From Mobula hypostoma (Eukaryota), in NCBI RefSeq assembly GCF_963921235.1, contig NC_086121.1, positions 23,312,001 to 23,376,000 of the forward strand: a stretch of 64,000 nucleotides of DNA, read 5' to 3'. This document shows, piece after piece, positions 2,226-64,000 of this stretch; positions within the stretch are counted from its first letter, which is position 1; each line of letters opens with the position of its first letter. Under the pieces are notes generated by a model that was not told the DNA's origin, did no database searches, and saw nothing but the letters and a program-made list of their open reading frames with translations. The position numbers and the translations under genes are program-made.

Positions 2226-2424
2226 GTGGTATTTGATTTCCATCCCTCCCCCTCCTGTCTTCTCCTATCATTTTGGATCTCCCCCTCCCACTTTCAAATC
2301 TCTTACTAACTCTTCCTTCAGTTAGTCCTGACGAAGGGTCTCGGCCTGAAACGTCGGCTGTACTTCTTCCTAGAGATGCTGCCTGGCCTGCTGCGTTCAC
2401 CAGCAACTTTGATGTGTGTTGCTG
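2226..2424 (+). mobile_element. Penelope-like element 3' end (pLTR fragment)
   Basis: Near-identical to the reverse complement of the 3' end of the long PLE at about 60140-60340. Confidence 0.85.
2324..2359 (+). ncRNA. Minimal type I hammerhead ribozyme (PLE-borne), intact core
   Basis: agtc-CTGACGA-agg gtctcgg cct-GAAA-c-GTC^ggct; stem I agtc/ggct with one G-U pair. Confidence 0.8.
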
Positions 2425-6384: not shown

Positions 6385-6483
6385 AAAGACTGGCATATCT
6401 TCCAATATATTTAAGAAATGGTTCAGCTTACTTAAATCATCTAAAAATATGCTGCTAACAGATATTAAAGAGTGGCATTTAAA

Positions 6484-6670
6484 AACGTAAACAACAGGAA
6501 TTCTGCAGATGCTGGAAGTTCAAGCAACACACATCAAAGTTGCTGGTGAATGCAGCAGGCCAGGCAGTATCTCTAGGAAGAGGTACAGTCGATGTTTCGG
6601 GCCGAGACCCTTCGTCAGGACTAACTGAAGGAAGAGCTAGTAAGAGATTTGAAAGCGGGAGGGAGAGTGA
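6484..6670 (-). mobile_element. PLE 3' end fragment
   Basis: Same sequence as 60113-60290. Confidence 0.85.
6587..6622 (-). ncRNA. Minimal type I hammerhead ribozyme, intact core (AUC triplet)
   Basis: Minus strand reads agtc-CTGACGA-a-ggg tctcgg ccc-GAAA-c-ATC^gact. Confidence 0.75.
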
Positions 6671-12803: not shown

Positions 12804-14284
12804 CCGGTCAGGCAGCATCTACGGAACTGAATAAGCAGTCAATGTTTTGGGCCGACACCCTCCTTCAGGATTGGAAAGAAAGGGGGAAGATTCCAGAATA
12901 AAAAGGTGGAGGCACGGGAAGGACGACAAGCTGCTAGGAGATAGGTCAAACAAGCTAGGTAGGAAAGGTAAAGGGCTGGAGAAAGAATCTGATAGGAGAG
13001 GGGATGATGGGAGAAAGAGAAGAAGGTGAAGGTGATAGGTGAGAAGAGGTCAGAGTGGGAATAGAAGAAGAGAGAAAGGGGAGGGGGAAAGTTACTGGAA
13101 GGAGAAATTAATGTTCATGCCATCATACATAAAAGTTGCTGGTGAACGCAGCAGGCCAAGCAGCATCTATAGGAAGAGGTACAGTCAACGTTTTGGGCTG
13201 AGACCCTTCGTCAGGGCTAACTGAAAGAAGAGCTTGAAATTCCAGCATCTGCAGATTTCCTCGTGTTCATGCCATCAGGTTGGAGGCTACCTAGACAGAA
13301 TATCAGGTGTTGCTCCTCCACCCTGAGAGTGGCCTCATTGTGGCAGGAAAGGAGGCAATGGACCAACATGTCAAAAAGGGAATGGGGAGAGAAATTAAAA
13401 TGATTGCCCACCATTCCGTTTTTGGCAGATAGAGCAGAGTAGCTTGATAACGAAGTTCCCTTATTTATGTCAAGCCTCGTCAATATAGAGGAGGCTGCAC
13501 TGGGAGCACCAGATACCCAGTATTACCAAAACCAACAGTTTTGCAGGTGGTGTTGCCTTATGTGGAAGGACTGTTTGGGGCCCTGAATGAAGCTAAGGGA
13601 GGAGGTAAATGGGCAGGTGCAGCATTTCTGTCGCTTGCAGGGATATGTGCCAGGTGGGAGATTAGTGGGGAGGAATTAATGAAGAAGGGAATCATGGAAG
13701 GTGCAATCTCTGTGGAAAGTAGGTGGAGGGGGACAAAGATGTGTTTGGTGGTAGGATTCCACTGAAGGTGGCGGAGGTTGCGGTGAATGTGTTGGATGCG
13801 GAGGCTTAAGGGGCAGTAGGTAAGGACAAGAACTCTATCTCCGTTAAGATGGCGGGAAGATGGGGTGAGCGTGGATGTCCAGGAAATAGAGATGTGGGTG
13901 AGGGCAGCCATCAATGGTGGAGGAAAAGAAACCCCATTCTTTAAAAAAGGAGGCTCTGATGTCCTGGGAAGGAAAGTCTCATACTGGGAACAGATGCAGC
14001 AAAGACAAAGGAACTCTGAAACTCCCTCTCCTCTCAGGTTCCTTCTTCTCAAGTCCTTTACCTTTCCCACTCACCTGGCTTGACTTATTACCTTCTAACT
14101 AGTCCTCCTTCCCCACTTTAGTCTGGTATCTCCTCCCTTCCTTTCTAATGCTGAAGATGGGAGTTGACCCGAAACGCGACTGTTTATTCATTTCCATGGC
14201 TGCTGCCTGACCCTGGTGAGTTCCTCCAGCATTGTGTGAGTGTTGCTCTGGATTTCCAGTGTCTGCAGAATCTCTTGTGTTTCA
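12804..14284. mobile_element. Inverted composite PLE: minus-strand pLTR plus EN/thumb region, flipping near 14030 to a + strand pLTR
   Basis: EN remnants (VANHFN...EATLRVEEQHLIFCLGSLQPDGMN-like) and thumb remnants. Flanking direct repeat gttttcaa at 12796-12803 and 14285-14292. Confidence 0.85.
13126..13263. mobile_element. Younger mini-PLE nested in the older PLE
   Basis: 14-bp TSD tgttcatgccatca at 13112-13125 and 13264-13277. Confidence 0.85.
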
Positions 14285-15281
14285 GTTTTCAATGTTTTCT
14301 TTAAAAATACCAGATCCTAGCAAGTAGCAAAAGGAGGAGGCAGGACGCTGTGGAACCTGGAGCAAAATGATAAATTGCTGGATAAACTCAGTGTGTCAGA
14401 CAGCAGTTGTGTGAAAAGAGGGGACAGTCATCGCTCATGGTCGAGAGTCTTCAGCTAGGATGTAGATTGTCCATTTCCTTCTACAGTGCTGCCTTCTGCA
14501 TCACTGAATTCCTCCAGCAGTTGGTTTTATGCTTCGCAAGCAGTGCTGAGCTTCAAGTGCCCAGGGGTGATAGCAATACACTGAGATAATAGAGCCACAC
14601 TGTCTGTGTCCTGTTAATCAGCCTGCTTGTTGTTTGGGGCATTGATACCTGCTGGCCCATTCTCTCTCCCGTGTTATCCCTGACCTTGCGGATCTCACGG
14701 TACTTTCCATTTCTGCCTCTCTCCTTTTACTTTCCAACTAAAGTCTGCACCCTGCTTTAAACAAAGTACTTTCCACATTTGCATCTGTTGTGTGTCACTT
14801 CATTCAGACAAGAGGCACTTGCCTAGCCAAATGCTTAGGATACTGAGCCAAAAATTATTGGAAGACTCAAAGTTCGAATCCTCATACGATTTTCTGAGTT
14901 AGTACACGTCAACTGGCCCGGTGATGTGTATCAGAAGATTCTGTATTGAACTTCATGTCAAAGACCTCAGTAAGTCATGCAGCCTGACGGGTGGTTCACT
15001 GTGGTACTGAAGGATGCCTCACTGCTGCAAGTCCCTTTTTCCATATCAGAGCGCAAATCAAGATGCAATAACCGCACTGCTTTGAAGAAAAGCAGAGAGA
15101 TTTCCTGGTATACTGATCAACGTTTATTCCTCAAAGAACTTCACTCTAGCAGATTGTACAGACATTGCCTGGGAGATCTTGCTGCGTGCAAATAACCTGC
15201 CGTGTAGTGGCTACAATTCAGGTTGCTTCACTTGTAAAGTGAGCCCGAGACAACCTGAAGGCAGAGTACAAATCCATGTTA

Positions 15282-15955
15282 AAGCAACACTCACAACACG
15301 CTGGAGGAACTCAGCAGGTCAGGCAGCATCTGTGGAAATGATCAGTCAACGTTTCAGGCTGGAACCCTTCGTCAGGACTGTAGAGGGAAGGGGCAGAGGC
15401 CCTATAAAGAAGGTGGGGGGAGGGTGGGAAGGAGAAGGCTGGAGGTTCCAGGTGAAAAACAAGTAAGGGAAAAGATAAAGGGGTGGGGGATAGGCAGGAA
15501 ACGTGAAGAAGGAATAGGGAAAAACACAATGGGTAGTAGAAGGAGACGGAACTATGAGGGAGGTGATAGGCAGCGGGGGAGGGGGCAGAGTGAAATAGGG
15601 ATAGGGGAAGGGAGGGGGAGTGAATTACCGGAAGTTGGAGAATTCAATGTTCATACCAAGGGGCTGGAGACTACCTAGACAGTTATGAGGTGTTGCTCCT
15701 CCAACTTGAGCTTAGCCTCATCATGGCAGTAGAGGAGGCCATGTATGGACATATCCGAATGGGAGTGTGAAGCAGAGTTGAAGTGGGTGGCAACCGGGAG
15801 ATCCTGTTTGTTGTGGTGGATGGAGCGGAGGTGCTCGATGAAGCGGTCCCCCAATCTGCGTCAGGTTTCACCGATGTAGAGGAGGCCGCACCGGGAGCAC
15901 CGGATGCAATAGATGACCCTAACAGACTCACAAGTGAAGTGTTGCCTCACCTGGA
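15282..15955 (-). mobile_element. 5'-truncated PLE (GIY-YIG endonuclease end plus pLTR)
   Basis: Homologous to 60145-60865. 12-bp TSD aaatccatgtta at 15270-15281 and 15956-15967. Confidence 0.88.
15343..15380 (-). ncRNA. Minimal type I hammerhead ribozyme, intact core (GUU triplet)
   Basis: Minus strand reads cagtc-CTGACGA-agg gttccag cct-GAAA-c-GTT^gactg with a perfect 5-bp stem I. Confidence 0.75.
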
Positions 15956-17236
15956 AAATCCATGTTATTGTTGTTGAGAAAGAAGCAATTGCACACACAG
16001 GTACTGGGTAGTGCAGGCTTCAGCTTCAGACGTGCCTTGAATAACTGTTTCGCCATCCAGAACTAAAGTAAGATTAAAACAGGAAAAGAGGCCATTTGGC
16101 CCGTTGAATCTCTAATAGCCCTGGTGAGTGATCCAGGTGCTCCCATAGCCCTGCAAAATCTTTCCTTTCAAGTATTTCTCCAGCCCCCTGTTGAATGCAC
16201 AATTGAACCTCCCTCACTCCTACCTCTAGCAATGTCTTTGCTGGCCTTAACCCCTTGTTGTGTAAAATTATGGATCTCTGGCTTCTGTTCCCAAGATTCT
16301 GTACACAACGGAGTCAAAAGAAGTTGACAGTGGGGAAAATCGACATTAAAAAGAACCTTAATGTTTACCCAACAACCAGCACCATCCATTCCACAAATAC
16401 AATAGCCTCTCAAAACCCTCCTCCCCTCCCCCCCCACCACACACACCTCTTTTCAGAGATTAAGGAAGCATGCAAGCACATTTTTTAAACCAGGAAGCAC
16501 TGCCAGTTTATCAATATATAAAGAAAAACATTTTTCTTCATGTATCCAGCAGATAAGTAGCTCTGTGTTTGTGAGATGCAAGTATATTTGATACTAATTA
16601 CAATAATAGTAGATTCTTTACTGGACAAGGTTTCATATTAGCGTTTTCCTACAGAAAACTCAATAATGAATCTTGTAGCTCCATCTTGTGTTTCATTAAG
16701 GCTTAGCTCCTGTGTGCTGCTTTTTACCCCTATTATTAAAAAAAATAGATTGAAAACGCAGTATTGAAAAAGCCTAAATGGTGTGTCAATAAATTCAACA
16801 CAGCAAATTCAATAACTTGTTCTCATTACTTATAACATAATGTATTTGAAAGTTACCATGCTAAAGCACTGTGGAACAGTAACAGAATACTTAGATGTGG
16901 TATTATATTGCTGGGATAAATGAGCACAAACTAAAAATATTCTAGTAAAATTGCACATTGCATTGCTCATCACTGGGCAATAATTATTCAAAAGGATGTG
17001 AGTGAAATGTTCAGTTTCCAAATATTGTTTAGAAAAGATCCTCAAAACCTATTATAGGAAGGCCATTATGATTTTGAGAAAAGATTGGGGCTATGGAGAG
17101 TTTGTGCTTAAGTGAGGAAATTTTTAATATAATATGGAAAGATGTATACAAGATAAGTTTTAAACAAGCTTGCAAACAGCTAAGCCTTATTTGGTTAAAA
17201 CTGGTGAAAAGAATGTTTAGGGCAAATATCAGGAAG

Positions 17237-17480
17237 AAACACACATGAAAGTCTGGAGGAACTCAGCAAGTCAGGGAGCACCTATGGAAAAGAGTGAACA
17301 GTTGATGTTTTGGACGAGACCCTTCTTTAGGACTGAGATGGAAGGGGTGAGATGTCACCCAGCTTCCCAAAGTATCAGCTGTTCGCTCTTTTCATAGATG
17401 CTGCCTGACCTGCTGTGTTCCTCCAGCATCTTGTGTGCATTGCTTTGGATTTCCCGCATCTGCAGATTTTTTTGTGTTTG
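17237..17480. mobile_element. Fold-back mini-PLE
   Basis: Two inverted pLTR ends. 13-bp TSD aaatatcaggaag at 17224-17236 and 17481-17493. Confidence 0.85.
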
Positions 17481-20400
17481 AAATATCAGGAAGCATTGTC
17501 TTTATGCAAACAATTTAACTCCTAGTACAAAACAAACCCAGAATCTTTAAAATACAATAAATGGACATAAAAGGTTTGCGACTTTTTTATTCTGATAGAT
17601 GAGCCAAAATGGTTTCTTAATCTATACCCAAGCCTGTGATTTCACTTAACATGATGAATAAAATTTCCCATTATCCATAGGGATTGCTTTTCATTATTTC
17701 AAGAGGATTTTTAAAAATGTAGGCAAGTCATTACTGCCAATTCACCTGTGGCATTTACATTGAGTGTGCAGGAATCAATTTGTGCACCATCTGGGATTAT
17801 ACCACTTAATTACTAGCAAGTAGTAAACTAAAATTCTGCTCCAAAGTTCCACATTAATGCACACATCTCACCTATTTGAACACTGCAGTGAATGTGTATC
17901 AGAGGTCAGCTAAAACACCTGTGTAGCTCATTAGTATGATAAGAACAGATGAACTTAAACCCACACATTTTGACACTGCCTTTTTATAATACCAGCATTC
18001 ATGCATGCACTTATAAGGTGAATTTAATAATATCCAGTTGTTTATGAAACATACTTTGATCTTAATTGTTCCCCTGTTTCTAAGCAATTTCATGCATCAG
18101 TCTCCATAATGGAGATAAGTCTTTTGGTTTGTGAAACAATGAAGAACATCCATGTTCTCAGTTCCTCAGTTAGATAATGCTTCAAAACTGAGGATGACTT
18201 GCTTTGGCTGCTTTTCCCCTGCAGAATCTGCAAACTATGCCACAGATAGGCAAACGGTGCTTGACAGGGTGGGTGAAGAGGCAGTTTGGGGTGTTCCACC
18301 AGATACCAGCACCTAACCTCCTTCGTGTCTGATGTAGAAGCTCTAGGTGCTTTGTGGAAATATATCTGTAACCCTGAAGTCTTTATGAATTTGTAAAATG
18401 TAATGGGACAAAATGGAACCTGTGAGATCCCAGATTGCTTGGCTAGTTTGCTGGTTTGGATGGAGGCTTATAGGAAGATGTGTGTGTTTTATGGCAGGGG
18501 GAATGTTTTGACAACAGAGAAAAACAGGACACATCCTCTAAGGACAAATTGACTGAATTGGAGAACAAATATCAGGAACTAAAGATGGATGCAGATAACG
18601 GAGGAAGGTTATGGATTGGAACAATTTCTGTTCTCTGTAAAAGGTGTAAGAGTGGTTTGTTTGACCTATAAGATTGAAGCTATTCTCCAACAATAGCTTG
18701 AGGAGGTAGCTTCCCTTGCAAGTAAGTAATAAATGTGCCTATAATTTGATCCACTCTGAATTTGTTGTAGTTTTTTAACTGTCTGTTAGAAGACCGAGCT
18801 GAACAGTACCTGACAACTTCTTCATGCTATCCTGGACATTCCTTCTTCATTGTGAAGAGTCATGGACTGGGAATTCCCACAAGTCAGAGGGGATTTGTCA
18901 AAGAATGACAGAATTTTGGTTATTACGGGAGTCAAGAAATATGGAGGTATTTGCAAAAAAGTGATGCTGCAGCCGTGGTAGATACAGAATGGTGGAGATT
19001 GGGTGTTGGTTTAGATGACCTACTTCTGTTTCTAACATTCTTATGACAATGTCCTTGAAGTATTTTATCTCTCTAGCTGGAGATATCTTGCCTTGCATGT
19101 AATAGCAGTATAGTATCAGCCATGCAGATGACATCCCCACTCCCCCTCAAGCTGGCTCTATAAGCTCATCATTTGCACCACCCCCTGCCACCATCTGGTT
19201 CTTCTATCACCTCTCCCTCTCACTCCTATATACAGGTGGCTCCCATGTTACAGAGGTTATGAAGTTCACCTTTATAGATTTCAGAAATCAACTCACTACC
19301 CAAACAAAAACTGAGATAAGGAATAAACCTCACTTCCACAGAATTTGTATGGGGGGAGAAAGTAAATAAATCAACACCACCGCATTCCTAGATGAATGCA
19401 TATAGATTAGATTATGAAGACACGTAATCCTCTTTTATTGTCATTTAGTAATGCATGCATTAAGAAATGATACATTACTTCCTCCGGTGTGATATCACAA
19501 AACACAGGACAAACCAAGACTGAAAAAACTGACAAAACCACATAATTATACATATAGTTACAAACAGTGTAACAATACCATAACTTGATGAAGAAAGTCC
19601 GTGAGCACAGTAAAGTTCAAAGTTTCTCAAATGTCCCACATCTCACGCAGACGGGAGAGGGAAGAAAAACTCTTCCTGCCACGCCCAACCACAATCCGAC
19701 TCTGAGTCATCCGAAAACTTCGAGCTCTGATCAGCTCTCCGACACCGAGTACTGAGCGCCATCTCTGTCCGAGCGATTCGACCTCTTTCTCGGTCGCCAA
19801 AAGCAGGCAAGGCCGGGGATTTTGAAGCCTACCCTCCCAAAGATTCCTGACCACATATGACACAGCTTCACGTTATAGAAAATTGTGTTATGGATTGTCT
19901 TCTAGGGACACAACATTCCCAAAATAGGGGGGGGGTGATGAAACTTGTCCGCTCTTCCCATTGCACGCTCAGCCCTGATGTAGGGGTCTCAAACTAAAAT
20001 GCCAACTGGCACTTTGCTTCCACAGATGCTGCTTGACCCACTGATTTCTTCCAGCAGGTCAGGCACGTGTAGGTTCACAGCCGGGGCCAGAGTCTTGTAT
20101 ATTTCCCACTCCTAAACTCATTGAATTCATAGGAAAATATATAATACCACTATACAACATGTACAAAGGTTTGTAGAAACACATGATATAAAAGTGTGCT
20201 TGGGAATTAATAATCCAGGAATTCTAAGAACCTAGCACTAATTCCCAAGGATGCCAATTATTGGTGTTTTGCTCATCATGGTTTTCTTCACAGTGAGAAC
20301 TCCTCCGTAACAGGGAGAAGGCAAGGGATTGGGGCTGAGTGGGCAAAAGGATCAGTCGTGATCAATTAATGGAGCAGACTCGATGGGGCCAAATGGCCTA

Positions 20401-23510: not shown

Positions 23511-23989
23511 TTATTACTGGAATAGAAATTCAGATGTAGATATAAGATGGACTGTGATTCAGACAAAATAGTTGTGATGAGACGACATGGACTATATGGA
23601 GGATAACTAGAACAGAAAGAGGGTCTAGGCCTAAAATGTCGACTGTTTACTCTTTTCTATAGGTGCTACCTGGTTTGCTGAATTCCTCCAGCATTTTGAG
23701 TGTGTTGCTTTGGATGTCCAGCATCCGCAGATTTTCTCGCCTTTGTGATAGAAAGAGTTATGTCGGGATAGAATGAACTACGAATAGGATCAGCATTGAC
23801 TTGAATGGAATAGATTCCAATTGGACCAGGTTGTTATTGGGAGAGACAGAGTGATTATGATTAGGGCAGATTGGAATTGGAGCAGGTTATGACATGGAGA
23901 GTGGCTAAGATTGCTCAGCACTAGATTGGATAAGGAAAGTCAGGTTGGGGTAGGTTGAGCAGAGATGGGGGGTATTATGATTGGGACAG

Positions 23990-31000: not shown

Positions 31001-31621
31001 CCCAGATCAGAGGCGACGCAATCGGCAACTGGGCGGCACCTAATTAATTAGCTTGTTTATTTCGGCTTTTTTCTTAAAGACGTGCTGGGTGCGCCCCGGC
31101 TACCGCTGCACCCCTGCATGCTTTGCAGCAATGTATGGGTCCGCGGCCCGGAGGTTGGGGACCACTGCTCCACTGTTGCAATGTGCCCACACTCAGGTTC
31201 GAGGAACAACACTTTGGGTAGCTTCCAACCTGATGGCGTGAACATCGATTCCTCAAACATCTGGTAATGGGTGCCCCCCCCCTTCACTGTTCCCTATCCC
31301 TTTTCCCCACTCTCACCTTCTTGCCTGCCCATCACCTCCCACTGGTGCTCTTCCCCTTTTCTTCCATGGCCTTCTGTCCTCTCCTATCAGACTACCCCCT
31401 TCTCCAGTCCTGTATCTCTTTCATAAATCAACTTCCCAGCTCTTTACTTAATCCCTCTCCCTCCAGGTTTCACCTATCACCTATCTCCCCTACCCCCCCT
31501 CCAACCTTTTAAATCTACTCCTCATCTTTTTTTCTCCAGTCATGCTGAAGGGTTTTGTCCCGAAATGTCGACTGTACTTTTTTCCATAGATGCAGCCTGG
31601 CCTGCTGAGTTCCTTCAGCAC

Positions 31622-31663
<42 letters not shown>

Positions 31664-34600
31664 GTTTAGATTTCCAGCATCTGCAGATTTTCTCTTGTAT
31701 CTGAACTGATACAGTACTTTTTAGTGTGTTGTTGGAATGTTGTCATCGATAAGATGCGAAGCTGGAACTCCACTCGAGCTGGGCACTGTTTAATGTTTAT
31801 ACATGAACTCCTATAACATGATCTTTTAAAGAGTTCGTCATTGCGTGTAAATTGGCTATTACAATTCCCATGTTAAAACTCACAAGTATATTTCAAAAGT
31901 ACTTCAGCTAGTGAAGTGCTTTCTCATATCCTGTGAGTGCAAGAGGTATTGTATGAATGCAAGCCTTTTAATTGCACTTCCCCACACAGTCTACAAATAC
32001 TGATCTGACCTCAGGACCTGGGTGGGGAGCCAGACTTTTGGATCAAGCGAATTATAGAAACGTGTAACTCTCAAACTTGTGTAATTACTTGCATGCATTT
32101 ATTAAGCCCAAGGTTACAGTTTAACTTTTCTGGGGACAGTTAATCAGCTTTTTGTTTGACTGAGACTAATGGTGTGCAAAGTTGCTGTTATACAAATATA
32201 AGAAACAAATACAAGAAATGTGTACACCACTCGAGTATTTAAAAAAAATTTAATCTAAGTGTTTACACACTTTACATTGGTCATATTTATTGTAAAAACG
32301 TTTACTGAATGTTAACAGAGTCACTCTTATTATGTGTTACTGAGTGCTTTCAAAATATGGTGGGTTAGCTCAAATAACTGCTGTTGTTACTCCTATACAT
32401 GCTGGCAATACTCCTATAATAATGTTGGACAAAAAATTACAGGATTTTAACTTGATGATAAAGAGCATAATTTGACCTTGGCCAGCTGGTGTGCAATTAA
32501 AATGAAAACTTGATAATGGTATTCACATGATCTTGCTCTTAGATAACAGTACAGCGACTCTGGGCCACATTTTGCTCTTTGACCATCTAAGGTCCTGTGC
32601 TGATGTTTATAGGTATAGCCTGCTCTTCTTACTGTTCTCCAAAGGAGACATGTTGCTACATGACTAAAAGCTCAAATATAATGTACTTCCTGAAAGTACA
32701 GCCATTTTTGAGAGAATTTCACGCAATGGACTCGCTGGCCATGGATCTGGTTGCCTCTGGATTGTAGCAGGTATAATAGGCAGATACTTAAACTCCAAAA
32801 CCTTGACAATTAATGATCTTTCAGCCATGATGTAGCAGCTTAACTGTACACATTGTTTTTTCCAACAAATACACTAAGGTATTTGGATAAAACAATGAAA
32901 CAAATCACACAAAAATTAGCGCAACACACACAAAATGCTGGGAAATGGGGGTGGTGAAGGAGAGGGGCATTACCGGAAGTTTGAGAAATCAATGTTCATG
33001 CCGTCTGGTTGGAAACTACCCAGACGGAATACAAGGTGATGGGATATAAACTTCACCATTCCCCATTCCCATTTTCCCCTCTCACCTTCTCTCCTTATCT
33101 TCTGGTGCTCCTCCCACTTTTCATTCTTCCATGGCCATCTGTCCTCTACAATCAGATTTCCCCCTTCTCCAGCCCTGTATCTCTTTCACCAATCAACTTC
33201 ACAGATCTTTACTTCACCTTTCCTCCCCCTGTCTGGGTTTCACCTATTACCTTGTGTTTCTTCCTCCCCTCCCCCCACCCTCTAACTCATACTCCTCATC
33301 TTTTTTTCTTCAGTGCTGATGAAGGGTTTTGGCCCGAAACATCGACTGTGCTCTTTTTTTTCCCCATAGATGCTGCCTGGCCTGCTGAGTTCTTCCAGCT
33401 TTTTGTGTGTGTGTTACTTGGATTTCCAGCATCTGCAGATTTTCTCTTGTTTGTGACAAAAATAAAACTAGAGATGACCAGCAAAATGCAGGTTTGGAAA
33501 TACAAGTAGTTTAAACGTGGTGTTGAAATGTTTAATTTATTGTGTTGAAGAGCAAAAAACTATTGTCAGTTACTAATGATTGATATGAATGGGTAAGCTA
33601 ACTTGATGTAATAGAGACCAATTCATTTCTAGCAAACTATAAATATTAAATCCAAATTTTTACCTCTGGGCAATATTTTCCATAACTCCATCTGTTTAAT
33701 AATTAATATTTAGCATATATAATTGAATATAACATGTTTTTGTATCTAATTTTCAGTTACAAATCTGGAAAAGCCAGGCACGTTTGTTGGCAATGATGTG
33801 ATAGTAGCCTTTGCAAGAAACAATCAAGTGAATATAGTGATCCACCAGCTTAACGCCCCACTTTGGCAGGTAAATTTAATGTTCAGTTCATATTATGGGA
33901 TACTATGATAGTGTACAGCAAGTGTTAGAGGCTGCTATATTGAAAAATGCCTATAGAACAGCACTGCAAAACATGAATGACTTTGTGAATGACTCCTGCA
34001 GAACGCTACCATATTACTTATAGTACTTGGCTGCTTCCCTCTGCAGTGTTCTGCAGTACACATCAAACTTGCATTGTAGTGATGTTATTTTGATGCACTG
34101 ACTCTGCATGAAGTGTCATGTCCTTCCTCTCCACTTTGGATATCGGTCTTGTTTGTGGGAACTGGTGTCTAGCAATTAACGTTTGAGAGTGATCAGTAGC
34201 ATTGACAGAGCCTGAAATTCAGAGTCAACTCTTATCTACCTCTGACTTAAAAATGCTAAAAGACTGCCCAACACCACCTCAACAGGCAACCTGCTGAAGG
34301 GTCTCAGCCCAAAACGTCGACTGTACTCTTTTTCCATAGAGGCTGCCTGGCCTGCTGAGTTCCTCCAGCATTTTGTGTGTGTTGCTTGGATTTCCAGCAT
34401 CTGCAGATTTTCTCTTGCTTGTCATAAGGTGACCAGACCATTTCCTGTTATTAGTTTAGTGAACCTTCTCTAAACTGCTTCTGATGTGTTAATGTCGCTC
34501 CTTAAGTAACAAGACCACTGTGCAGGGTATTCCAGATATGGTCTCACCCATGTCCTTTATAACAGAAGCTTGACCTTTTTTGTATTCAGTTTCCCTAGTT

Positions 34601-37600: not shown

Positions 37601-40600
37601 TGGTAGTAGATGGTTGCCTCTCTGACTGGATGCCTGTGGCAAGTGGTGTGCTGCTGGGATCAGTGCTGGGACTGTTGTTCATCTGTATCAACAAATTGGA
37701 TGATAATGTGGTAAACTGGATCAGCAAATATGCAGATGACATCAAGATTGGGGGTGTACTGTTCAGCGAGGAAGACAATCAAAGCTTGTAACGGGATCTG
37801 TACCAGCAGGAAAAATGGGCTGAAAAATGGCAGATGGGATTTGATGCAGACGAGTATGAGGCGTTGCACTTTGGGAGGGTAAACCAGGGTAGGACTTAAA
37901 CTCTTGAGTGGTAAGGCACTGAGAAGTGCGGTAGAACTTGGGAATCTGAGAATACAGAATCATAATTCCTTGAAAGTGGCATCAGAAATAGATAGGGTTG
38001 TTACAAAAGCTTTTGGCACATTGGCCTTCATAAATCAAAGTATTGAGTACAGGAGTTTGGTGGTTACGTTGATGTTGTATAAGATATTGGTGAGGCCTAA
38101 CAAGAGAAAATCTGCTGATGCTGGAAATCTAAGCAACACAAAATGCTGGAGGAAATCAGCAGGCCAGGCAGCATCAATGGAAAAGAGTACAGTCGACGCT
38201 TTGGGCCAAGACCCTTCAACAGGACTGGAGGGAAAAAAGATCAGTAGATTTAAAAGGGGTTGGGGGAAAGAAACACAAGGTGATGGCTGAAACCGGAAGG
38301 GGGAAGATGAAGTAAAGAGCTGGGAAGTTGATTGGTGAAAGAGCTACAGGGCTGGAGAAGGGGGAATCTAATAGGAGAGGACAGAAGGCCATGGAAGAAA
38401 GAAAAGGGGGAGGAGCACCAAAGGGAGGTGATGGCAGGCGAGGAGAAAAGGGGATGGGGAATGGTGAAGGAGTGTGGGGGGAGGGCAGAATCAGAGGTTC
38501 AAGAAATAGATGTTCATGCCATCAGGTTTGAGGCTATCCAGATGGAATACAAGGTGTTGTTCCTCCAACCTGACTGCGGCCTCATCTTGACAGTAGAGGA
38601 GGCTATGGATTGACATATCAAACAAGTAGCATTTGTTCTGCTTACAAGGATAAGTGCCGGGAGCAAGATCAGTGGGGAGGAACAAATAGACAAGGGAGTC
38701 GCATAGGGAGCGATCCCTGCAAAAAGCAGAAGGTGGGGGAGGAGGGAAAGATGTGCTTGGTGGTGGGATCCTGTTGGAGATGGTGGAACGTTCTGGAGAA
38801 TTATGTGCCAGCACTTATCCTTGTAAACAAAACAAATGCTACTTGTTTGATATGTCAATCATCACCTCCTCTACCCTCAAGATGAGGCTGCACTCAGGTT
38901 GGAGGAACAACACCTTGTATTTACTCTGATGAAACCATCAAAGCTGCCCTCAAACGCACCTCTTCCATTTCACACATATCTGCTCTTACCCCATCCTCCC
39001 GTCACCCTACTGGGGATAAGGTTCCTCTTGTTCTCACCTACTACCCCCACCAGCCTCCGCGTCCAGCACGTAATTCTTAGAGAGCATGTCCTGTGAGGAT
39101 AGATTGAATAAGTTAGGACTTTTGTCTTTGGAGCAAAGGAGAATGAGGGGTGACTTGTTTGAGGTGTACAAGATAATAAGAGGCATAGCTTGGACAGCCA
39201 GAGTCTGACTTTTTCCCCAGGATGGCTAATTTAGGGGGCAATTGTAGGAAAAAATGGGGGGGGGTGTACACCAGAGGTAGAGTTTTTACGGAGTGGGATG
39301 TGTGTGGAACGTGTTGCCAGGGGTGGTGTTGGAGGCAGATGCATTAGGAATATTTAAGAGACCGCTAGATAGGCACATGTATGAAAGAACAATGGAGGGC
39401 TACATGGGAGGGAAGGGTAAGATTGGTCTTGGAATAGCAGAAAATGTTGGCACAACATTGAACGGTGTATTTTCCTGTACTGTTCCATGTTCTAATTGTT
39501 TAGCAAAAACATTACTTGCCCATTGTTACCCCAGCCTTGAATGTTATGTTTTTGCTGAAGATGAGCAGAGTTTATCATTAACTGAGGAGATACTTGTGAA
39601 ATGGCATAATTATCAAATATCCCCCACATCTTTTGAGGAAATGTGGTTGATGAAGCAGTAGATGGTTGAGCCCAAGATCCTGGGATTCGTTAATGCTTTG
39701 GGCTTGAGATGTTTGACGTACAACAGCTACAACTCTGTTCCTTTGTGTTTTTTTTCCCCCCTCCAGTGAGAAAGGTTAACTTCCATGTTCTCATTGACTC
39801 ATATTTTATAAGGGTTCCTAAATGCATGTTCCTAAGTGATCAAACACTTCTCTGATGTTGGGGGCAGTAATTTTGTGGTGTTTGGACCAGTGATCCATCG
39901 CAGCCTGGAGCCAGCTCATCTTGACCTCTTTGAAGTAGTTATTTATGAAGCAGCACTGTTTGATAGCTGTATCAGCGATGCATTTCTTCACCTTGTCAAG
40001 GTGAGGTAAACTTTTCCTTTGTTAGTTTTACCATCTGAAAGCTGTGTTGCTGTTGGACTACACTTGAAGTTCCTTCAGAGGCATTGCTATACAGTTTTAT
40101 CTTTCTAATGATTTCAGATATGGAGGGAAGCTGTTTCACATTCCGGTGAAAGGTGTTAGGTGTAGGAAATTTCCTTACCTTTGACCTGTTTCCACAATGG
40201 TGAGGCCTCCATCTGTCCTGCCATTGTGTTGCTGATTGAAAGGCATGATTCTGTGAGTATTACCATATGAGGTTGTGGGACAAGTCCCCAGATGAGATTC
40301 AGATCTATTTATCACATGTACATCAAAACATACAGTGAAATGTGTCATTGTTGTTAACAGCCAACATACACAAGGATGTGCTGCAAGTGTAACCATACAT
40401 TCAGTGCCAAAATAGCATGACCACACTGCAGAGCAGAACAACATAGAACACAACAAAACAGAACATACTGACAGGAACAGTATAACAAGCCCCGTTCCTC
40501 TTTCCCTTTCACCCACCTGCCCACGCATGTACACAGTCCTCTAACCCCCAGGATGGGCTGTCTTCAGCCTCCAGAAATTCATGGACTTGCACACACTGGG

Positions 40601-45169: not shown

Positions 45170-45515
45170 GCAGTTACCTCTTCTCAATCACCTATCATCT
45201 CCCTCTGCCCCTCCTCCTTTCCTTTCTCCCATGGTCCACTCTCCTCTCCTATTGGATTCCTTTTACACCCATCTCCTCCCCAGCTTCTTCACCCCTCCCC
45301 AACCCGCCTGGTTTCACCTTCCCCTCCCCCATTTCTTATTCTGGTATCTTCCTCCTTCCTTTCCAGTCCTGATGGAGGGTCTCAGCCTGAAGTGTGAACT
45401 GTTTATTCATTTCCATAGATGCTGTCTGACCTGCTGAGTTCCTCCAGGGGTGGGTGGGTGGGTGTGTGTGTGTGTTGCTGTGGATTTCCAGCATCTGCAG
45501 AATCTCTTGTGTTTG
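45170..45515 (+). mobile_element. PLE pLTR fragment (degenerate hammerhead)
   Basis: Homologous to the other pLTR tails. Confidence 0.75.
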
Positions 45516-56559: not shown

Positions 56560-56812
56560 GTTGCCAATCACCTGTCCAGCTCTTGGCTCCATCCCTCCCC
56601 CTCCTGTCTTCTCCTATCATTTCAGATCTCCCCCTCCCCCTCCGACTTTCAAATCTCTTACTAACTCTTCTTTCGGTTAGTCCTGACGAAGGGTCTCGGC
56701 CCAAAATGTCGACTGTACCTCTTCCTAGAGATGCTGCCTGGCCTGCTGCGTTCACCAGCAACCTTAACATGTGTTGCTTGAAATTCCAGCATCTGCAGAT
56801 TTCCTCGTGTTC
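56560..56812 (+). mobile_element. PLE pLTR fragment
   Basis: Near-identical to the long PLE 3' end; the hammerhead GAAA is mutated to AAAA. Confidence 0.85.
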
Positions 56813-58127: not shown

Positions 58128-58625
58128 GCACACACAAAAAGCTGGAGGAACTTAGCACAGGGAGGGAAATGAATGGTGAACAGTCGACATTTCAGGCTAA
58201 CATCCTTCATCATGGCTGGAGAAGAAAGGGCCAAAAGCCAGAATAAGAAGGCGGGGGAGAAGAGGGGAAAAAACACAAGCTGGCAGGTGATAGGTGAAAC
58301 CAGGTGAGGCAGAAGGTGCGGGGTGGCGGGGGGGGGGAATGAAATAAGAAGCTGGAAGGTGGAAAGAGGTAAAGGACTGGAAAAGGAGGAGAGTGCACGA
58401 TGGAAGAAAAAGGGAAGGAGGGGCACCACAAGGAGGTGATATGGAAGGTGAAGGGAAGGAATAAGAGGGGAATGGAAAAAGAACGGAGGGAGGCAGAGAA
58501 TTTACTGTAAGTTAAAAAGAAATCTATATCCTTTCCATTTCTGATGAAGGATCTCAGCCCAAAACATAACCCTTTATTCCCCTCCAACTTGCTGACTCCA
58601 GCATCAGCAGGCGCTCCCGTGTTCA
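58128..58625. mobile_element. Older inverted PLE pLTR pair
   Basis: A minus-strand pLTR followed by a short + strand arm; both hammerheads degenerate. Confidence 0.7.
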
Positions 58626-59615: not shown

Positions 59616-60208
59616 AAACCACTCAGATGTTTTGAATAACAATACAGGGTCCTAAGAACCTTGTCCCTGTAGTCATCTAATGCTGGACCATTCTTGTATT
59701 CAGAGTTGAAGGCACAAATGGAGCAGGTGGTTTTGTTTTATTGACAAAAGACGTCCAGCCCATGAAAACATGATTCACTGTAACTTCACATTAAGTATTA
59801 GCATATCACTGCAACTTGTATCCAGTTAATTATTAAGTTTTCTACTCTGCAAGATATTTTAATCAATATTTCAATGAATATGTGCAAATTGTCACCTTTG
59901 TGTAGGGAATTGCACTGGCTACTCCATTCCCAAGCTGTTACGATTGCGCAGAACAAGGTGACAATGGAGTAGTATGATTAAATGTTTTTAATGTCACATT
60001 AGTGATGGCATATGCAGAGCAACTTTCAGAGTGGGAACTATGAACCGGGCCTGCCGAGACGAAAACATGTGCACTCGTAAGCCCGCACCAAAAGACAGTA
60101 CCTCCTATGCATACAACAGGAATTCTGTAGATGCTGGAAATTCAAGCAACACACATCAAAGTTGCTGGTGAATGCAGCAGGCCAGACAGCATCTGTAGGA
60201 ATAGGTGC

Positions 60209-60244
60209 AGTCGACGTTTCAGGCCGAGACCCTTCGTCAGGACT
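60209..60244 (-). ncRNA. Minimal type I hammerhead ribozyme, intact, in the PLE pLTR
   Basis: agtc-CTGACGA-agg gtctcgg cct-GAAA-c-GTC^gact, on the PLE sense strand. Confidence 0.85.
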
Positions 60245-60531
60245 AACTGAAGGAAGACTAAGGGATTTGAAAGTTGGAGGGGGAGGGGGAGATCCAAAAT
60301 GATAGGAGAAGACAGGAGGGGGAGGGATAGAGCCAAGAGCTGGACAGGTGATAGGCAAAAGGGGATACGAGAGGATCATGGGACAGGAGGTCTGGGAAGA
60401 AAGACGGGGGGGGGACCCAGAGGATGGGCAAGAGGTATATTCAGAGGGACAGAGGGAGAAAAAGGAGAGTGAGAGAAAGAATGTGTGCATAAAAATAAGT
60501 AACAGATGGGGTATGAGGGGGAGGTGGGGCC

Positions 60532-62730
60532 TTAGCGGCAGTTAGAGAAGTCGATGTTCATGCCATCAGGTTGGAGGCTACCCAGACGGAATATAAGGTG
60601 TTGTTCCTCCAACCTGAGTGTGGCTTCATCTTTACAGTAGAGGAGGCCATGGATAGACATGTCAGAATGGGAACAGGATGTGGAATTAAAGTGTGTGGCC
60701 ACTGGGAGATCCTGCTTTCTCTGGCGGACAGAGCGTAGATGTTCAGCAAAGCGGTCTCCCAGTCTGCGTCGGGTCTCGCCAATATATAAAAGGCCACATC
60801 GGGAGCACCAGACGCAGTATATCACCCCAGTCGACTCACAGGTGAAGTGTTGCCTCACCTGGAAGGAATGTTTGGGGCCCTGAATGGTGGTAAGGGAGGA
60901 AGTGTAAGGGCATGTGTAGCACTTGTTCCGCTTACACGGATAAGTGCCAGGAGGGAGATCAGTGGGGAGGAATGGGGGGGACGAATGGACAAGGGAGTTG
61001 CGTAGGGAGCGATCCCTGCAGAATGCAGAGAGGGGGGGGAGGCAAAGATGTGCTTAGTGGTGGGATCCCGTTGGAGGTGGCGGAAGTTACGGAGAATAAT
61101 ATGTTGGACCCGGAGGCTGGTGGGGTGGTAGGTGAGGACCAGGGGAACCCTATTCCTAGTGGGGTGGCGGGAGGATGGAGTGAGAGCAGATGTACGTGAA
61201 ATGGGGGAGATGCGTTTAAGAGCAGAGTTGATAGTGGAGGAAGGGAAGCCCCTTTCTTTAAAAAAGGAAGACATCTCCCTTGTCCTAGAATGAAAAGCCT
61301 CATCCTGAGAGCAGATGCGGCGGAGACGGAGGAATTGCGAGAAGGGGATGGCGTTTTTGCAAGAGACAGGGTGAGAAGAGGAATAGTCCAGATAGCTGTG
61401 AGAGTCAGTAGGCTTATAGTAGACATCAGTGGATAAGCTGTCTCCAGAGACAGAAAGATCTAGAAAGGGGAGGGAGGTGTCGGAAATGGACCAGGTAAAC
61501 TTGAGGGCAGGGTGAAAGTTGGAGGCAAAGTTAATAAAGTCAACGAGTTCTGCATGCGTGCAGGAAGCAGCGCCAATGCAGTCGTCGATGTAGCGAAGGA
61601 AAAGTGGGGGACAGATACCAGAATAGGCACGGAACATAGATTGTTCCACAAACCCAACAAAAAGGCAGGCATAGCTAGGACCCATACGGGTGCCCATGGC
61701 TGCACCTTTAGTTTGGAGGAAGTGGGAGGAGCCAAAGGAGAAATTATTAAGAGTAAGGACTAATTCCGCTAGACGGAGCAGAGTGGTGGTAGAGGGGAAC
61801 TGATTAGGTCTGGAATCCAAAAAGAAGCGTAGAGCTTTGAGACCTTCCTGATGGGGGATGGAAGTATATAAGGACTGGACATCCATGGTGAAAATAAAGC
61901 GGTGGGGGCCAGGGAACTTAAAATCATCGAAAAGTTTAAGAGCGTGAGAAGTGTCACGAACATAGGTCGGAAGGGATTGAACAAGGGGTGATAAAACAGT
62001 GTTGAGGTATGCAGAAATGAGTTCGGTGGGGCAGGAGCAAGCTGAGACAATAGGTCGGCCAGGACGGGCAGGTTTGTGGATCTTGGGTAGGAGGTAGAAA
62101 CGGGAAGTGCGGGGTGTGGGAACTATAAGGTTGGTAGCAGTGGATGGGAGATCCCCTGAGCGGATAAAGTCGGTGATGGTGTGGGAGACAATGACCTGGT
62201 GCTCCTTAGTGGGGTCACGATCGAGGGGAAAATAAGAGAAGGTATCCGCGAGTTGTCGCTGTGCCTCGGCAAGGTAGAGGTCAGTACGCCAGACTACAAC
62301 AGCATCCCCCTTATTGGCGGGTTTAATAATAAGGTTGGGATTAGTGCGGAGGGAGCGGAGAGCAGAGCGTTCCGAAGGAGTGAGGTTGGAATGGGAACAA
62401 GGTGCGGTGAAGTCGAGACGGTTGATGTCCCGTCGGCAGTTAGCAATAAAGAGATCCAGAGCAGGCAGAAGACCAGAGCGGGGTGTCCATGAAGAAGAGG
62501 AGGGTTGAAGACGGGAGAAGGGGTCATCGGTGGGGGTGGAAGAGTCCTTGCCGAAGAAGTAGGCTCGGAGACGGAGACAGCGGAAGAAAAGTCATGGCGA
62601 ACACGGAACCCGCTGAGGTGTGGGCGAAGGGGGACAAAGGTGAGGCCCTTACTGAGAACAGAGCGTTCTGCCTCCGACAGTTGAAGGTCGGAGAGGATGG
62701 TAAAGACCCGGCACGGATGAGAGCTGGGAT
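60532..62730 (-). pseudogene. Frameshifted PLE RT-endonuclease ORF
   Basis: The RT (track ORF 60855-61886) and the EN (60532-60858) lie in different frames, with frameshifts near 61030 and 62590. Confidence 0.85.
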
Positions 62731-62732
62731 CA

Positions 62733-62875
62733 GAGGGGGGAGGGGGGAGGGGAAGGGGGAGGGGGGAAGGTGGAGGGGGAGGGGGGAAGGGGAAGGGGGA
62801 GGGGGAAGGGGGAAGGGGGAAGGGGGAGGGGGAAGGGGGAGGGGGGAAGGGGGAGGGGGAGGGGGAGGCGGGGGG
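62733..62875 (+). repeat. Polypurine (GGGGGA/GGGGAA)n tract at the PLE 5' breakpoint
   Basis: About 140 nt of almost pure G/A runs. Confidence 0.9.
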
Positions 62876-63256
62876 TGACCTCCTATGCACGTCAGGGCCC
62901 GGTCAATTTACCGTGCAAACCAGCGGCCGCGTGAGCAACTGCCATATTCTCGCCATCAACCCGATACGGTTCACAAGGCAAGCTTACTTCCATCAAATCC
63001 GCAAAGATTCCGGTGTCCTTGGTAGAAGACATTATGTCCTTCTCAGCTGAAGTTTGACTCTCAAGTTCTTGGGCTGGGCTTTGCTCCTCTTGCTGGATGA
63101 CAAAGCGCAGTCTTGTTCACTTCAGTTGTTGGACTTAAATCACTGAGGCTCCTACGGGGAAGCACCCAATCTCTGGATCATGTTCTTGATAACAGAGCGG
63201 GAGAGCAAGGCTCTAGTCTTCTCCACCTACCTCCACCCTAGTATTATTTGGATCTA

Positions 63257-64000
63257 CAGTGGTATGCAAAAGTTTGGGCACCCCTGGTCAAAATTTCTGT
63301 TACTGTGAATAGTTAAGTGAGTAGAAGATCTCCAAAAGTCATAAAGATAAAGACGAAACACTCTTTTCAACATTTTAAGCAAGATTAGTGTATTATTTTT
63401 GTTTTGTACAATTTTAGAGTGAAAAAAAGGAAAGGAGCACCATGCAGAAGTTTGGGCACCCCAAGAGATTTGAGCTCTCAGATAACTTTTACCAAGGTCT
63501 CAGATCTTAATTAGCTTGTTAGGGCTATGGCTTGTTTACAGTCATCATTAGGAAAGGCCAGGTGATGCAAATTTCAAAGCTTTATAAATACCCTGACTCC
63601 TCAAACCTTGTCCCAACAATCAGCAGCCATGGGCTCCTCTAAGCAGCTGCCTAGCACTTTGAAAATTAAAATAAATGATGCCCACAAAACAGGAGAAGGC
63701 TATAAGAAGAAAGCAAAGCGTTTTCAGGTAGCTGTTTCCTCAGTTCGTAATGTAATTAAGAAATGGCAGTTAACAGGAACGGTGGAGGTCAAGTTGAGGT
63801 CTGGAAGACCAAGGAAACTTTCCGAGAGAACTGCTCGTAGGATTGCTAGAAAGGCAAATCAAACCCCCGTTTGACTGCAAAAGACCTTCAGAAAGATTTA
63901 GCAGACTCTGGAGTGGTGGTGCACTGTTCTACTGTGCAGCGACACCTGCACAAATATGACCTTCGTGGAACAGTCATCAGAAGAAAACCTTTCCTGCATC
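63257..64000 (+). mobile_element. Tc1-family IR/DR transposon, left end plus frameshifted transposase N-terminus (runs off the window)
   Basis: TA-cagtggtatgcaaaagtttgggcacccc with an inner direct repeat at about 63441-63462. ATG at 63629: MGSSKQL...GEGYKK...SGRPRKLS, frameshift at about 63862, then PRLTAKDL...STVQRHL...RRKPFL. Confidence 0.92.

What the first reader, a model, noticed from the sequence alone, without database searches (positions are those of the whole stretch)
60112..62877. Neptune-type PLE carrying an intact minimal hammerhead ribozyme; about 20 ribozyme-bearing ends across the window
Seen: the element's 3' end (60209-60244, minus strand) reads agtc-CUGACGA-stem II-GAAA-C-GUC^gact. 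The motif recurs intact at 2324(+), 6587(-) and 15343(-), near-intact at 33311(+), and decayed at about 12840, 13185, 14151, 17300, 19975, 31537, 34291, 38190, 45363, 56680, 58181 and 58541. Known: PLE pLTRs encode minimal type I hammerheads with a vestigial palindromic helix III (here AACGU) that are thought to cleave as dimers, and an extra A after A9 is a tolerated variant. Inference: this genome carries roughly one such motif per 3-4 kb, a large unannotated self-cleaving RNA load.
Basis: partly seen in the sequence, partly recalled or inferred. Interest (0 to 1): 0.8.

Follow-up and report, generated by a model that had tools for sequence, protein, structure and literature searches.

The report
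Known-type minimal hammerheads in ray Penelope tails
A broken Penelope-like jumping gene in a ray genome carries, in its tail, the stripped-down hammerhead (self-cutting RNA) motif long known from this class of element, and 17 more mostly decayed copies lie in the same 64 kb; it is real but ordinary, and cutting is untested.

Summary

- **The element.** Window 62877-60112 (minus strand) is a Penelope-like element (PLE). It has a 12-bp target-site duplication, a reverse transcriptase (RT), a CX4CX2C linker, a GIY-YIG endonuclease (EN) and two frameshifts.
- **The motif.** About 100 nt before the 3' end, at 60245-60208, lies a complete minimal type-I hammerhead. It has stem I (5 bp), CUGACGA, a bulged A, stem II, GAAA, the palindrome ACGU, and C17 before the cleavage site.
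- **Copy count.** Two half-motifs sit in fold-back pairs.
- **State of the copies.** Only 5 of 18 keep the catalytic core. Decay is concentrated at five CpGs. The three "perfect" copies have G·U at 10.1-11.1 where the family consensus has G-C.
- **Covariation.** There is none inside the window. In related elements from skate, corals and other metagenome contigs, stems I and II covary strongly. The bulged A and ACGU are constant there.
- **Annotation.** Rfam's models miss the motif entirely.
- **Novelty.** The class was published in 2014 (PMC4209133), including for fish Neptune elements. This is a new member of a known kind.

The scan's notes record the same motif on many other pieces of this genome. 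Self-cleavage is untested.

The parts
60112..62877 (-). Penelope-like element (Neptune-like), one unit, no upstream pseudo-LTR or hammerhead
   Evidence: tblastn of relatives shows frame 2 at 62719-62582, frame 1 at 62588-61032 and frame 3 at 61038-60544. Two frameshifts lie at about 62585 and 61035. Borders are set by the target-site duplication.
62878..62889 (-). 5' copy of the target-site duplication TGCATAGGAGGT
   Evidence: Read directly.
60100..60111 (-). 3' copy of the target-site duplication TGCATAGGAGGT
   Evidence: Read directly.
62745..62877 (-). C-rich (CCCCT-like) simple repeat at the 5' end of the element, inside the target-site duplication
   Evidence: Its origin is unexplained.
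61032..62588 (-). N-terminal region plus RT and thumb: 519 codons without a stop, with YIDD
   Evidence: Best matches are ray proteins at 87-96% identity carrying PF26215.
60909..60935 (-). Linker CKRNKCYTC (CX4CX2C) between RT and EN
   Evidence: The consensus of relatives is CxRxxCxTC.
60532..60858 (-). GIY-YIG endonuclease ORF
   Evidence: Pfam PF01541 at E 7.5e-5, 23.4 bits against a cut-off of 22.6.
60208..60245 (-). Minimal type-I hammerhead motif; predicted cleavage between 60213 and 60212
   Evidence: The core is complete, stem I is 5 bp (one U·G), stem II is 4 bp with G·U at 10.1-11.1, and ACGU is palindromic.
60112..60212 (-). About 100-nt 3' tail after the cleavage site, with conserved arms that can pair over a long range
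   Evidence: Conserved among ray subfamilies and skate. The common 3' end of copies is at about 60113-60110 in this element's coordinates.
2323..2360 (+). Hammerhead copy with core, stems and ACGU intact (short tail copy 2239-2423)
15343..15380 (-). Hammerhead copy with core intact and H17 = U; belongs to the 5'-truncated PLE at 15956-15279
6586..6623 (-). Hammerhead copy with core intact and C11.1 kept, but palindrome ACGU changed to ACAU
33311..33348 (+). Hammerhead copy with core intact, a stem I mismatch at 2.1, and ACAU
13182..13219 (-). Decayed copy (G12 to A) of the 5'-truncated PLE at 14013-13121
38190..38227 (-). Decayed copy of the 5'-truncated PLE at 38807-38100
31537..31574 (+). 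Decayed copy of a 5'-truncated PLE (ORF pieces at 30713-31258)
56678..56715 (+). Decayed copy (G12 to A) in the short tail copy 56561-56805
12836..12873 (-). Decayed copy
14146..14182 (+). Decayed copy (U16.1 lost)
17299..17335 (-). Decayed copy
19970..20008 (+). Decayed copy
23608..23645 (+). Decayed copy
34286..34323 (+). Decayed copy; homology starts at the 5' edge of the motif
45364..45401 (+). Decayed copy
58181..58218 (-). Decayed copy
58541..58568 (+). Decayed partial copy

Best explanation
The 38 nt at 60245-60208 (minus strand) are the minimal type-I hammerhead motif native to the 3' untranslated region of a Neptune-like Penelope-like retrotransposon of a ray.

**Shown here**
- The motif has the full catalytic core, a bulged A after A9, a helix III reduced to the palindrome ACGU, and stems I and II.
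- The same layout sits on the sense strand downstream of the RT/EN gene in related elements of skate, corals and other invertebrate-derived contigs. There the two stems change sequence but stay complementary.
- Reverse transcription starts about 100 nt downstream of the motif, so every 5'-truncated copy carries it. That is why 18 copies lie in 64 kb.
- After insertion the copies decay neutrally, mainly at five CpGs.

**Inferred from the published class**
- One motif cannot close helix III. Two copies would pair through ACGU and swap stem I strands to form a double hammerhead that cuts after C17, probably helped by the element's protein. The two copies could lie in a tandem or read-through transcript, or act in trans.
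- The likely role is processing of multi-unit transcripts to define the 5' end. It is probably not 3' end formation, because every copy here was made from RNA that was uncut at this site.
For: - **Motif and borders:** read directly.
- **Chance excluded:** 2 exact matches against 0.01 expected. The model gives 18 hits at E<0.01.
- **Element identity:**. Five copies keep ORF pieces and the rest are short 3' ends.
- **Occurrence in relatives:** core-only ascertainment in 86 fetched loci gives 24 sense-strand and 4 antisense matches. The antisense ones are inverted copies. About 0.2 would be expected by chance (own arithmetic).
- **Covariation in relatives:** among 27 distinct motifs the mean contiguous stem I is 3.59 bp against 0.96±0.25 with shuffled partners (0 of 2000 shuffles reach it). 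Stem II is 4.11 bp against 3.07±0.15 (0 of 2000).
- **Other conserved features:** twelve different complementary stem I sequences occur. The bulged A is present in 27 of 27, and G10.1-C11.1 in 24 of 27.
- **pLTR layout in a relative:** locus L011 has two sense motifs 3066 nt apart flanking the ORF.
- **Conservation across elasmobranchs:** motif plus tail are conserved in ray, skate and whale shark while the upstream UTR is not alignable.
- **Decay:** the rate of change is 0.31 per site at CpG positions against 0.09 elsewhere.
- **Literature:** PMC4209133 (class definition, Neptune of fishes, dimer model, low activity in vitro); PMC11167929 (protein-assisted cleavage, internal RT start); PMC6765202.
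Against: - No cleavage data exist for this motif.
- Inside the window there is no compensatory change.
- The nearest-neighbour model does not favour the double hammerhead: -11.5 kcal/mol against -22 for two monomers. The monomer's best fold also pairs GACG of the core with CGUC.
- The copies called intact have G·U at the normally G-C pair 10.1-11.1.
- This element has no second motif upstream.
- Rfam hammerhead models give no match even at E up to 10 on 91 bases.
- In the one PLE studied biochemically, ribozyme mutants did not impair insertion in vitro, and no RNA ends were seen at the cut site (PMC11167929).
Confidence: 0.85

Rival explanations
1. The motif is kept as a structured binding or positioning signal for the element's RT/EN protein near the site where reverse transcription starts. 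RNA cleavage would play no part in this family's life cycle.
For: - All 18 copies are continuous across the predicted cut site, so their templates were uncut there.
- The motif is conserved as one block with the ~100-nt tail.
- In Poseidon of Anolis, ribozyme mutants did not change insertion in vitro and cleavage needed the protein (PMC11167929).
- Naiad PLEs thrive without canonical hammerheads (PMC8557442).
Against: - The eleven catalytic nucleotides and H17 are kept across phyla while the helices vary freely. That is the pattern expected for a catalytic core rather than a simple hairpin signal.
- PLE hammerheads of fungi cleave well, and the metazoan ones cleave weakly as dimers (PMC4209133).
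Confidence: 0.12
2. The copies are an independent non-autonomous, ribozyme-bearing element (a non-LTR retrozyme or SINE-like family) rather than ends of PLEs.
For: - Thirteen of the 18 copies are short (250 bp or less) with no ORF remains.
- Retrozymes derive from PLE pLTRs (bioRxiv 10.64898/2026.07.22.740005).
Against: - No head-to-tail arrays exist. The closest same-strand neighbours, 346 nt apart, belong to different subfamilies.
- 5' start points vary.
- Five copies run on into RT/EN sequence.
- All share the PLE's own 3' end.
Confidence: 0.02
3. The match to the hammerhead consensus is a chance resemblance in a repeat.
For: Rfam finds no hammerhead. There is no covariation inside the window.
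Against:: the strand bias, the fixed position after the EN gene and the covariation across phyla exclude chance.
Confidence: 0.01

Closest known systems
Minimal hammerheads (min-HHR) of metazoan Penelope-like elements (Cervera & de la Peña 2014, PMC4209133; Lünse, Weinberg & Breaker 2016/17 as cited in PMC6765202)
   Same: Type I topology, short stem I (4-5 bp), one extra nucleotide between A9 and 10.1, palindromic 15.2-16.2 with no loop 3. Located on the sense strand in the PLE terminal region, and spread mostly as single motifs on truncated copies. Already reported for Neptune elements of fishes.
   Different: Stem II is only 4 bp with a CUCG loop; the trematode families have 7-8 bp. This ray family has five CpGs in 38 nt and so decays fast. 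The copy in question has G·U at 10.1-11.1. No upstream repeat is present in this copy.
Poseidon PAc hammerhead of Anolis carolinensis (Frangieh et al. 2024, PMC11167929)
   Same: A PLE hammerhead close to the internal start site of reverse transcription; a tail remains downstream of it in genomic copies.
   Different: In PAc the motif overlaps the start codon in the pLTR. Here it lies about 290 nt after the EN stop codon and about 100 nt before the 3' end. The clades differ: Poseidon lacks the CX2-5CxxC linker.
Non-LTR retrozymes of animals (bioRxiv 10.64898/2026.07.22.740005)
   Same: They carry type-I hammerheads related to PLE pLTRs and co-occur with PLEs, including in a chondrichthyan.
   Different: Retrozymes are tandem arrays of short units. 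Here the copies are dispersed, of variable length, and share the PLE 3' end.
Double hammerheads of newt satellite 2 and avocado sunblotch viroid (Forster et al. 1988, as cited in PMC4209133 and PMC6765202)
   Same: A helix III too weak for a monomer; activity comes from pairing of two copies.
   Different: Those keep a 2-3 bp helix III with a loop and have loop-loop contacts. Here helix III is only the shared ACGU.

Membership tests
Hammerhead ribozyme, PLE minimal type I | Catalytic core C3 U4 G5 A6 N7 G8 A9 ... G12 A13 A14, A15.1-U16.1, H17 | tested here: met
   Complete at 60240-60213. Also complete in 4 other copies, and 13 of 18 are broken.
Hammerhead ribozyme, PLE minimal type I | Stems I and II supported by compensatory change | tested here: met
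   None inside the window. Strong across related elements: stem I 3.59 bp against 0.96 shuffled, stem II 4.11 against 3.07, 0 of 2000 shuffles each, and 12 distinct stem I sequences.
Hammerhead ribozyme, PLE minimal type I | G10.1-C11.1 pair | tested here: inconclusive
   G·U in this copy, in 2323 and in 15343. G-C in the window consensus and in 24 of 27 distinct motifs, i.e. all those from other species. The U sits at a CpG.
Hammerhead ribozyme, PLE minimal type I | One nucleotide between A9 and 10.1 | tested here: met
   A in this copy and in 27 of 27 distinct motifs; stated as a class feature in PMC4209133.
Hammerhead ribozyme, PLE minimal type I | Palindromic 15.2-16.2, allowing a shared helix III in a dimer | tested here: met
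   ACGU at 60217-60214. It was part of the search pattern used on relatives, but is also seen with the looser descriptor.
Hammerhead ribozyme, PLE minimal type I | Sense-strand location in the PLE terminal region | tested here: met
   About 290 nt after the EN stop here. In relatives it lies 420-1190 nt after the RT match or 1-2 kb before it, with 24 sense against 4 antisense matches.
Hammerhead ribozyme, PLE minimal type I | Self-cleavage as a dimer | not testable with these tools
   The energy model does not favour the double hammerhead, but it ignores tertiary contacts and protein.
Rfam hammerhead families (type I, II, III, HH9, HH10) | Match to the curated covariance models | tested here: not met
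   No hit at gathering score in the window, nor at E up to 10 on 5 kb or on 91 bases.
Penelope-like element, EN+ | RT followed by a C-terminal GIY-YIG endonuclease in one reading frame | tested here: met
   The ORF is broken by two frameshifts.
Penelope-like element, EN+ | Pseudo-LTRs from partial tandem insertion | tested here: not met
   No motif or tail sequence at the 5' end of this copy. The layout is seen in relative L011.
Penelope-like element, EN+ | 5'-truncated and inverted head-to-head copies | tested here: met
   inverted junctions at 13231|13232, 20734|20739 and 23127|23135, and truncated copies with ORF pieces.
Neptune clade of PLEs | [quoted passage not shown] | tested here: met
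   CKRNKCYTC in frame with the EN. The criterion comes from PMC8557442; Nematis shares it.
Neptune clade of PLEs | Placement with named Neptune references in an RT tree | not tested
   No named reference sequences were available. The database names are all 'uncharacterized protein'.
Non-LTR retrozyme | Head-to-tail arrays of short hammerhead-bearing units | tested here: not met
   Positions and strands of the 18 copies show no array.

The most novel reading that the evidence does not exclude
Ray genomes may carry the largest hammerhead motif load of any vertebrate. If this window's one motif per 3.6 kb held genome-wide, the total would be hundreds of thousands of copies, against the 4,000-9,000 reported for coelacanth and Xenopus. 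The hammerhead plus a ~100-nt tail closed by a long-range stem would then be one functional module kept since sharks and rays split. In that module the ribozyme would act only on the upstream copy of a multi-unit transcript, defining the 5' end, and never at the 3' copy used to prime reverse transcription.
Probability: 0.2. Interest if true: 0.45.

Novelty: new member of a known kind. Interest (0 to 1): 0.22.

Why it matters
The finding adds a cartilaginous-fish family to a well-described class. Three practical points come out of it.

- Standard Rfam-based annotation is blind to these motifs.
- In a CpG-methylated vertebrate genome this CpG-rich motif decays fast. Counts of 'hammerheads' should separate intact cores (5 of 18 here) from relics.
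- Every copy was made from RNA uncut at its own 3' motif. Any model of what the ribozyme does for the element has to account for that.

None of this changes current understanding of PLE hammerheads.

Tried and rejected
- **Rfam scans.** Three were run: gathering score on the whole window, E up to 10 on 5 kb, and E up to 10 on 91 bases. None gave a hammerhead hit, so Rfam membership cannot be claimed.
- **Fuzzy regex scan.** It timed out and was replaced by blastn and a covariance model.
- **Covariation inside the window.** Uninformative: no pair changed on both sides.
- **Thermodynamic test of the dimer.** The double hammerhead is less stable than two monomers in the nearest-neighbour model. 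I treat this as inconclusive rather than as evidence against the dimer.
- **The alternative monomer pairing GACG/CGUC.** It depends on N7 = C, which is not conserved in relatives, so it is probably incidental.
- **Retrozyme reading.** Rejected, because there are no arrays.
- **Copies starting exactly at GUC^G.** I looked for these as a signature of cleavage in vivo and found none in this window. The nearest starts 5 nt upstream, at about 23127.
- **Missing data.** DNA for the bamboo-shark relative could not be fetched. The paper PMC5785218 is not held.
Full report
**What is there**

On the minus strand, window 60244-60209 reads agtc-CUGACGA-A-GGGUCUCGGCCU-GAAA-CG-UC^gact. In hammerhead numbering:
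- Stem I is UAGUC/GACUG, five pairs, one of them U·G.
- The core C3-A9 is CUGACGA, followed by one extra A.
- Stem II is GGGU/GCCU, closed by the loop CUCG.
- G12 A13 A14 follow. Helix III is reduced to A15.1-C-G-U16.1, the palindrome ACGU.
- C17 is the cleavage nucleotide, so the cut would fall between 60213 and 60212.

The 12-mer TGCATAGGAGGT lies at 62889-62878 and again at 60111-60100, so the insertion is 62877-60112.

**The element**

tblastn of long relatives maps the coding region in three frames: 62719-62582, 62588-61032 and 61038-60544. That means two frameshifts.
- The middle piece is 519 codons without a stop and contains YIDD.
- The last piece matches Pfam GIY-YIG (PF01541, E 7.5e-5).
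- Just upstream, in the same frame, lies CKRNKCYTC, a CX4CX2C motif. Relatives have CxRxxCxTC at the same place.

According to Craig et al. 2021 (PMC8557442), a Zn-finger-like CX2-5CxxC linker between RT and EN marks the Neptune and Nematis clades and is absent from Penelope/Poseidon. A 2026 preprint found only Neptune and Poseidon in vertebrates. 'Neptune-type' is therefore the likely clade, but I made no tree with named references.

The best protein matches are from the rays Hypanus sabinus and Mobula hypostoma (87-96% identity). Sharks and skates come next, then corals and molluscs at about 50-55%. The window is from a ray.

The 5' end of the insertion is a C-rich simple repeat of about 130 nt. 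There is no upstream repeat and no second hammerhead.

**How many copies**

blastn of the element against the window finds its last 100-250 nt many times. I aligned 14 copies of the motif (A2), built a covariance model (R1) and searched the window with filters off. It returned 18 matches at E<0.01: the 14 used to build it plus 12836(-), 14146(+), 19970(+) and 58541(+).

Two more half-motifs lie at the junctions of head-to-head inverted pairs, at about 20739(+) and 23127(-).

Five copies continue upstream into RT/EN sequence: 60208, 38190, 31537, 15343 and 13182. The rest are short 3' ends. These are therefore 5'-truncated PLE insertions. They are not arrays and not an independent element.

**State of the copies**
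- The full core is kept in 5 of 18: 60208, 2323, 15343, 6586 and 33311.
- Only the first three also keep ACGU. All three have U at 11.1, which gives G·U at the pair that is G-C in the window consensus and in all 24 distinct motifs from other species.
- The consensus motif holds five CpGs in 38 nt. Positions in CpGs changed at 0.31 per site against 0.09 elsewhere, and 40 of the 44 CpG changes were transitions.
- This is the pattern of neutral decay after insertion in a methylated genome. 'Intact' here means 'not yet hit'; it does not mean 'maintained'.

**Is it a hammerhead or a look-alike?**

*Chance.* The exact pattern occurs twice against 0.01 expected, so chance is excluded.

It gives nothing: 90.7% of cells are paired, but no pair changed on both sides. 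All copies are one family and differ only by decay.

*Covariation across relatives.* I fetched relatives of the RT from other genomes and from metagenome contigs, 86 loci in all.
- Using only the core sequence as bait (CTGANGA, 7-25 nt, GAAACGT), there are 24 matches on the sense strand and 4 on the antisense strand. The antisense ones are inverted copies. By my own arithmetic, about 0.2 would be expected by chance in 0.64 Mb.
- Among 27 distinct motifs, the mean run of pairs next to the core is 3.59 for stem I, against 0.96±0.25 when 3' partners are shuffled among motifs. For stem II it is 4.11 against 3.07±0.15. No shuffle out of 2000 reaches either value.
- Stem I takes twelve different complementary sequences, for example caca/tgtg, gcga/tcgt, gctc/gagc, ttcaa/ttgaa and agtc/gact.
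- The extra A is present in 27 of 27.
- Locus L011 has two sense motifs 3066 nt apart on either side of the ORF, which is the classical pseudo-LTR layout.

*Conservation in elasmobranchs.* Between ray, skate and whale shark, the motif and the ~100-nt tail align while the UTR upstream does not.

The structure is thus supported by covariation, and the ray motif is a member of that family.

**Comparison with what is known**

Cervera & de la Peña 2014 (PMC4209133) defined exactly this class. They described:
- minimal type-I hammerheads in the terminal repeats of all PLEs examined, including Neptune, Poseidon and Xena of fishes;
- a short stem I, a nucleotide between 9 and 10.1, a conserved G10.1-C11.1 pair and palindromic 15.2-16.2;
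- mostly single motifs on truncated copies, a proposed dimeric active form, and low activity in vitro.

The NAR review PMC6765202 cites Lünse, Weinberg & Breaker for cleavage as dimers. Frangieh et al. 2024 (PMC11167929) showed for a Poseidon element that cleavage needs the element's protein. In that work ribozyme mutants did not impair insertion in vitro, and reverse transcription started at internal sites, which leaves a tail.

Nothing in the window departs from this picture. Rfam's hammerhead models do not see the motif at any threshold tried, so it is indeed unannotated by standard pipelines.

**Mechanism**

*Shown.* The motif lies about 100 nt upstream of the common 3' end of the copies. 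All 18 copies are continuous across the predicted cut site, so the RNA templates were uncut at this motif when copied.

*Inferred.* Helix III cannot close in one molecule. Two motifs can pair through ACGU and exchange stem I strands to form a double hammerhead. The likely role is cutting multi-unit or read-through transcripts at the upstream motif.

*Unresolved.* The nearest-neighbour model gives -11.5 kcal/mol for that double structure against -22 for two monomers. The monomer's best fold pairs GACG of the core with CGUC. This neither supports nor excludes the dimer, since tertiary contacts and protein are not modelled.

**The rival reading**

The motif could be a binding or positioning signal and not an active ribozyme. 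I rate this at about 0.12. The uncut templates and the 2024 biochemistry favour it. The strict conservation of catalytic nucleotides, while the helices vary, speaks against it.

**Earlier notes of this scan**

A word search finds 424 notes in this genome that mention hammerhead and Penelope, so the motif has been noted many times on other pieces. Follow-ups there reached the same class (s1-142299). They also reported short tail copies whose starts pile up at the ribozyme (s1-141983). In my window only 34286 starts at the motif's edge, and none starts at the cut site.

**Verdict**

This is a new member of a known kind, and interest is low.

Noticed in passing
window 60112-60212 (-) and the matching tails of other copies; L004:5535-5640: The ~100-nt tail after the hammerhead has two conserved arms, about CUGCCUGGCCUGCUG and CAGCAUCUGCAG. 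They can pair over a long range around a middle part of variable length that includes (TG)n expansions. The arms are kept in ray subfamilies and skate, but only one pair shows a compensatory change. This is possibly the RT recognition structure.
   Followed up: partly
window 13231|13232, 20734|20739, 23127|23135, 17344/17396: Head-to-head inverted pairs of PLE tail fragments (fold-back mini-insertions). Several junctions lie within or a few nt from the hammerhead. This is a known by-product of PLE integration and the subject of another note on this window.
   Followed up: partly
window 2239-2423 (+) and 17234-17344 (-): Some tail copies end about 35 nt before the usual 3' end, so there are two discrete 3' ends. 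This is reminiscent of the two adjacent RT start sites reported for a Poseidon element.
   Followed up: no
window 62745-62877 (-): The 5' end of the PLE, inside the target-site duplication, is a C-rich CCCCT-like microsatellite of about 130 nt. A short version of the same repeat lies in the 3' UTR at about 60265-60290. Its origin is unexplained.
   Followed up: no
window 12836-17335 and 31537-34323: PLE ends cluster in the same orientation: four minus-strand motifs within 4.5 kb and three plus-strand motifs within 2.8 kb. They belong to different subfamilies, which fits insertion next to earlier PLE copies.
   Followed up: no
window 60208-60245 (-): The monomer's lowest-energy fold pairs G5-G8 (GACG) with CGUC of helix III/C17, which would mask the core. 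It depends on N7 = C and is not conserved in relatives.
   Followed up: partly
window 63608-63874 (+): An ORF of 88 aa looks like the N-terminal helix-turn-helix part of a Tc1/mariner-type transposase. This is judged from the sequence only.
   Followed up: no
L002:5685-5722 and L003:5675-5715: The copies in an ENA contig and in whale shark have CCGAYGA in place of CUGAYGA (U4 to C). These are decayed examples in the loci that happened to be fetched.
   Followed up: no
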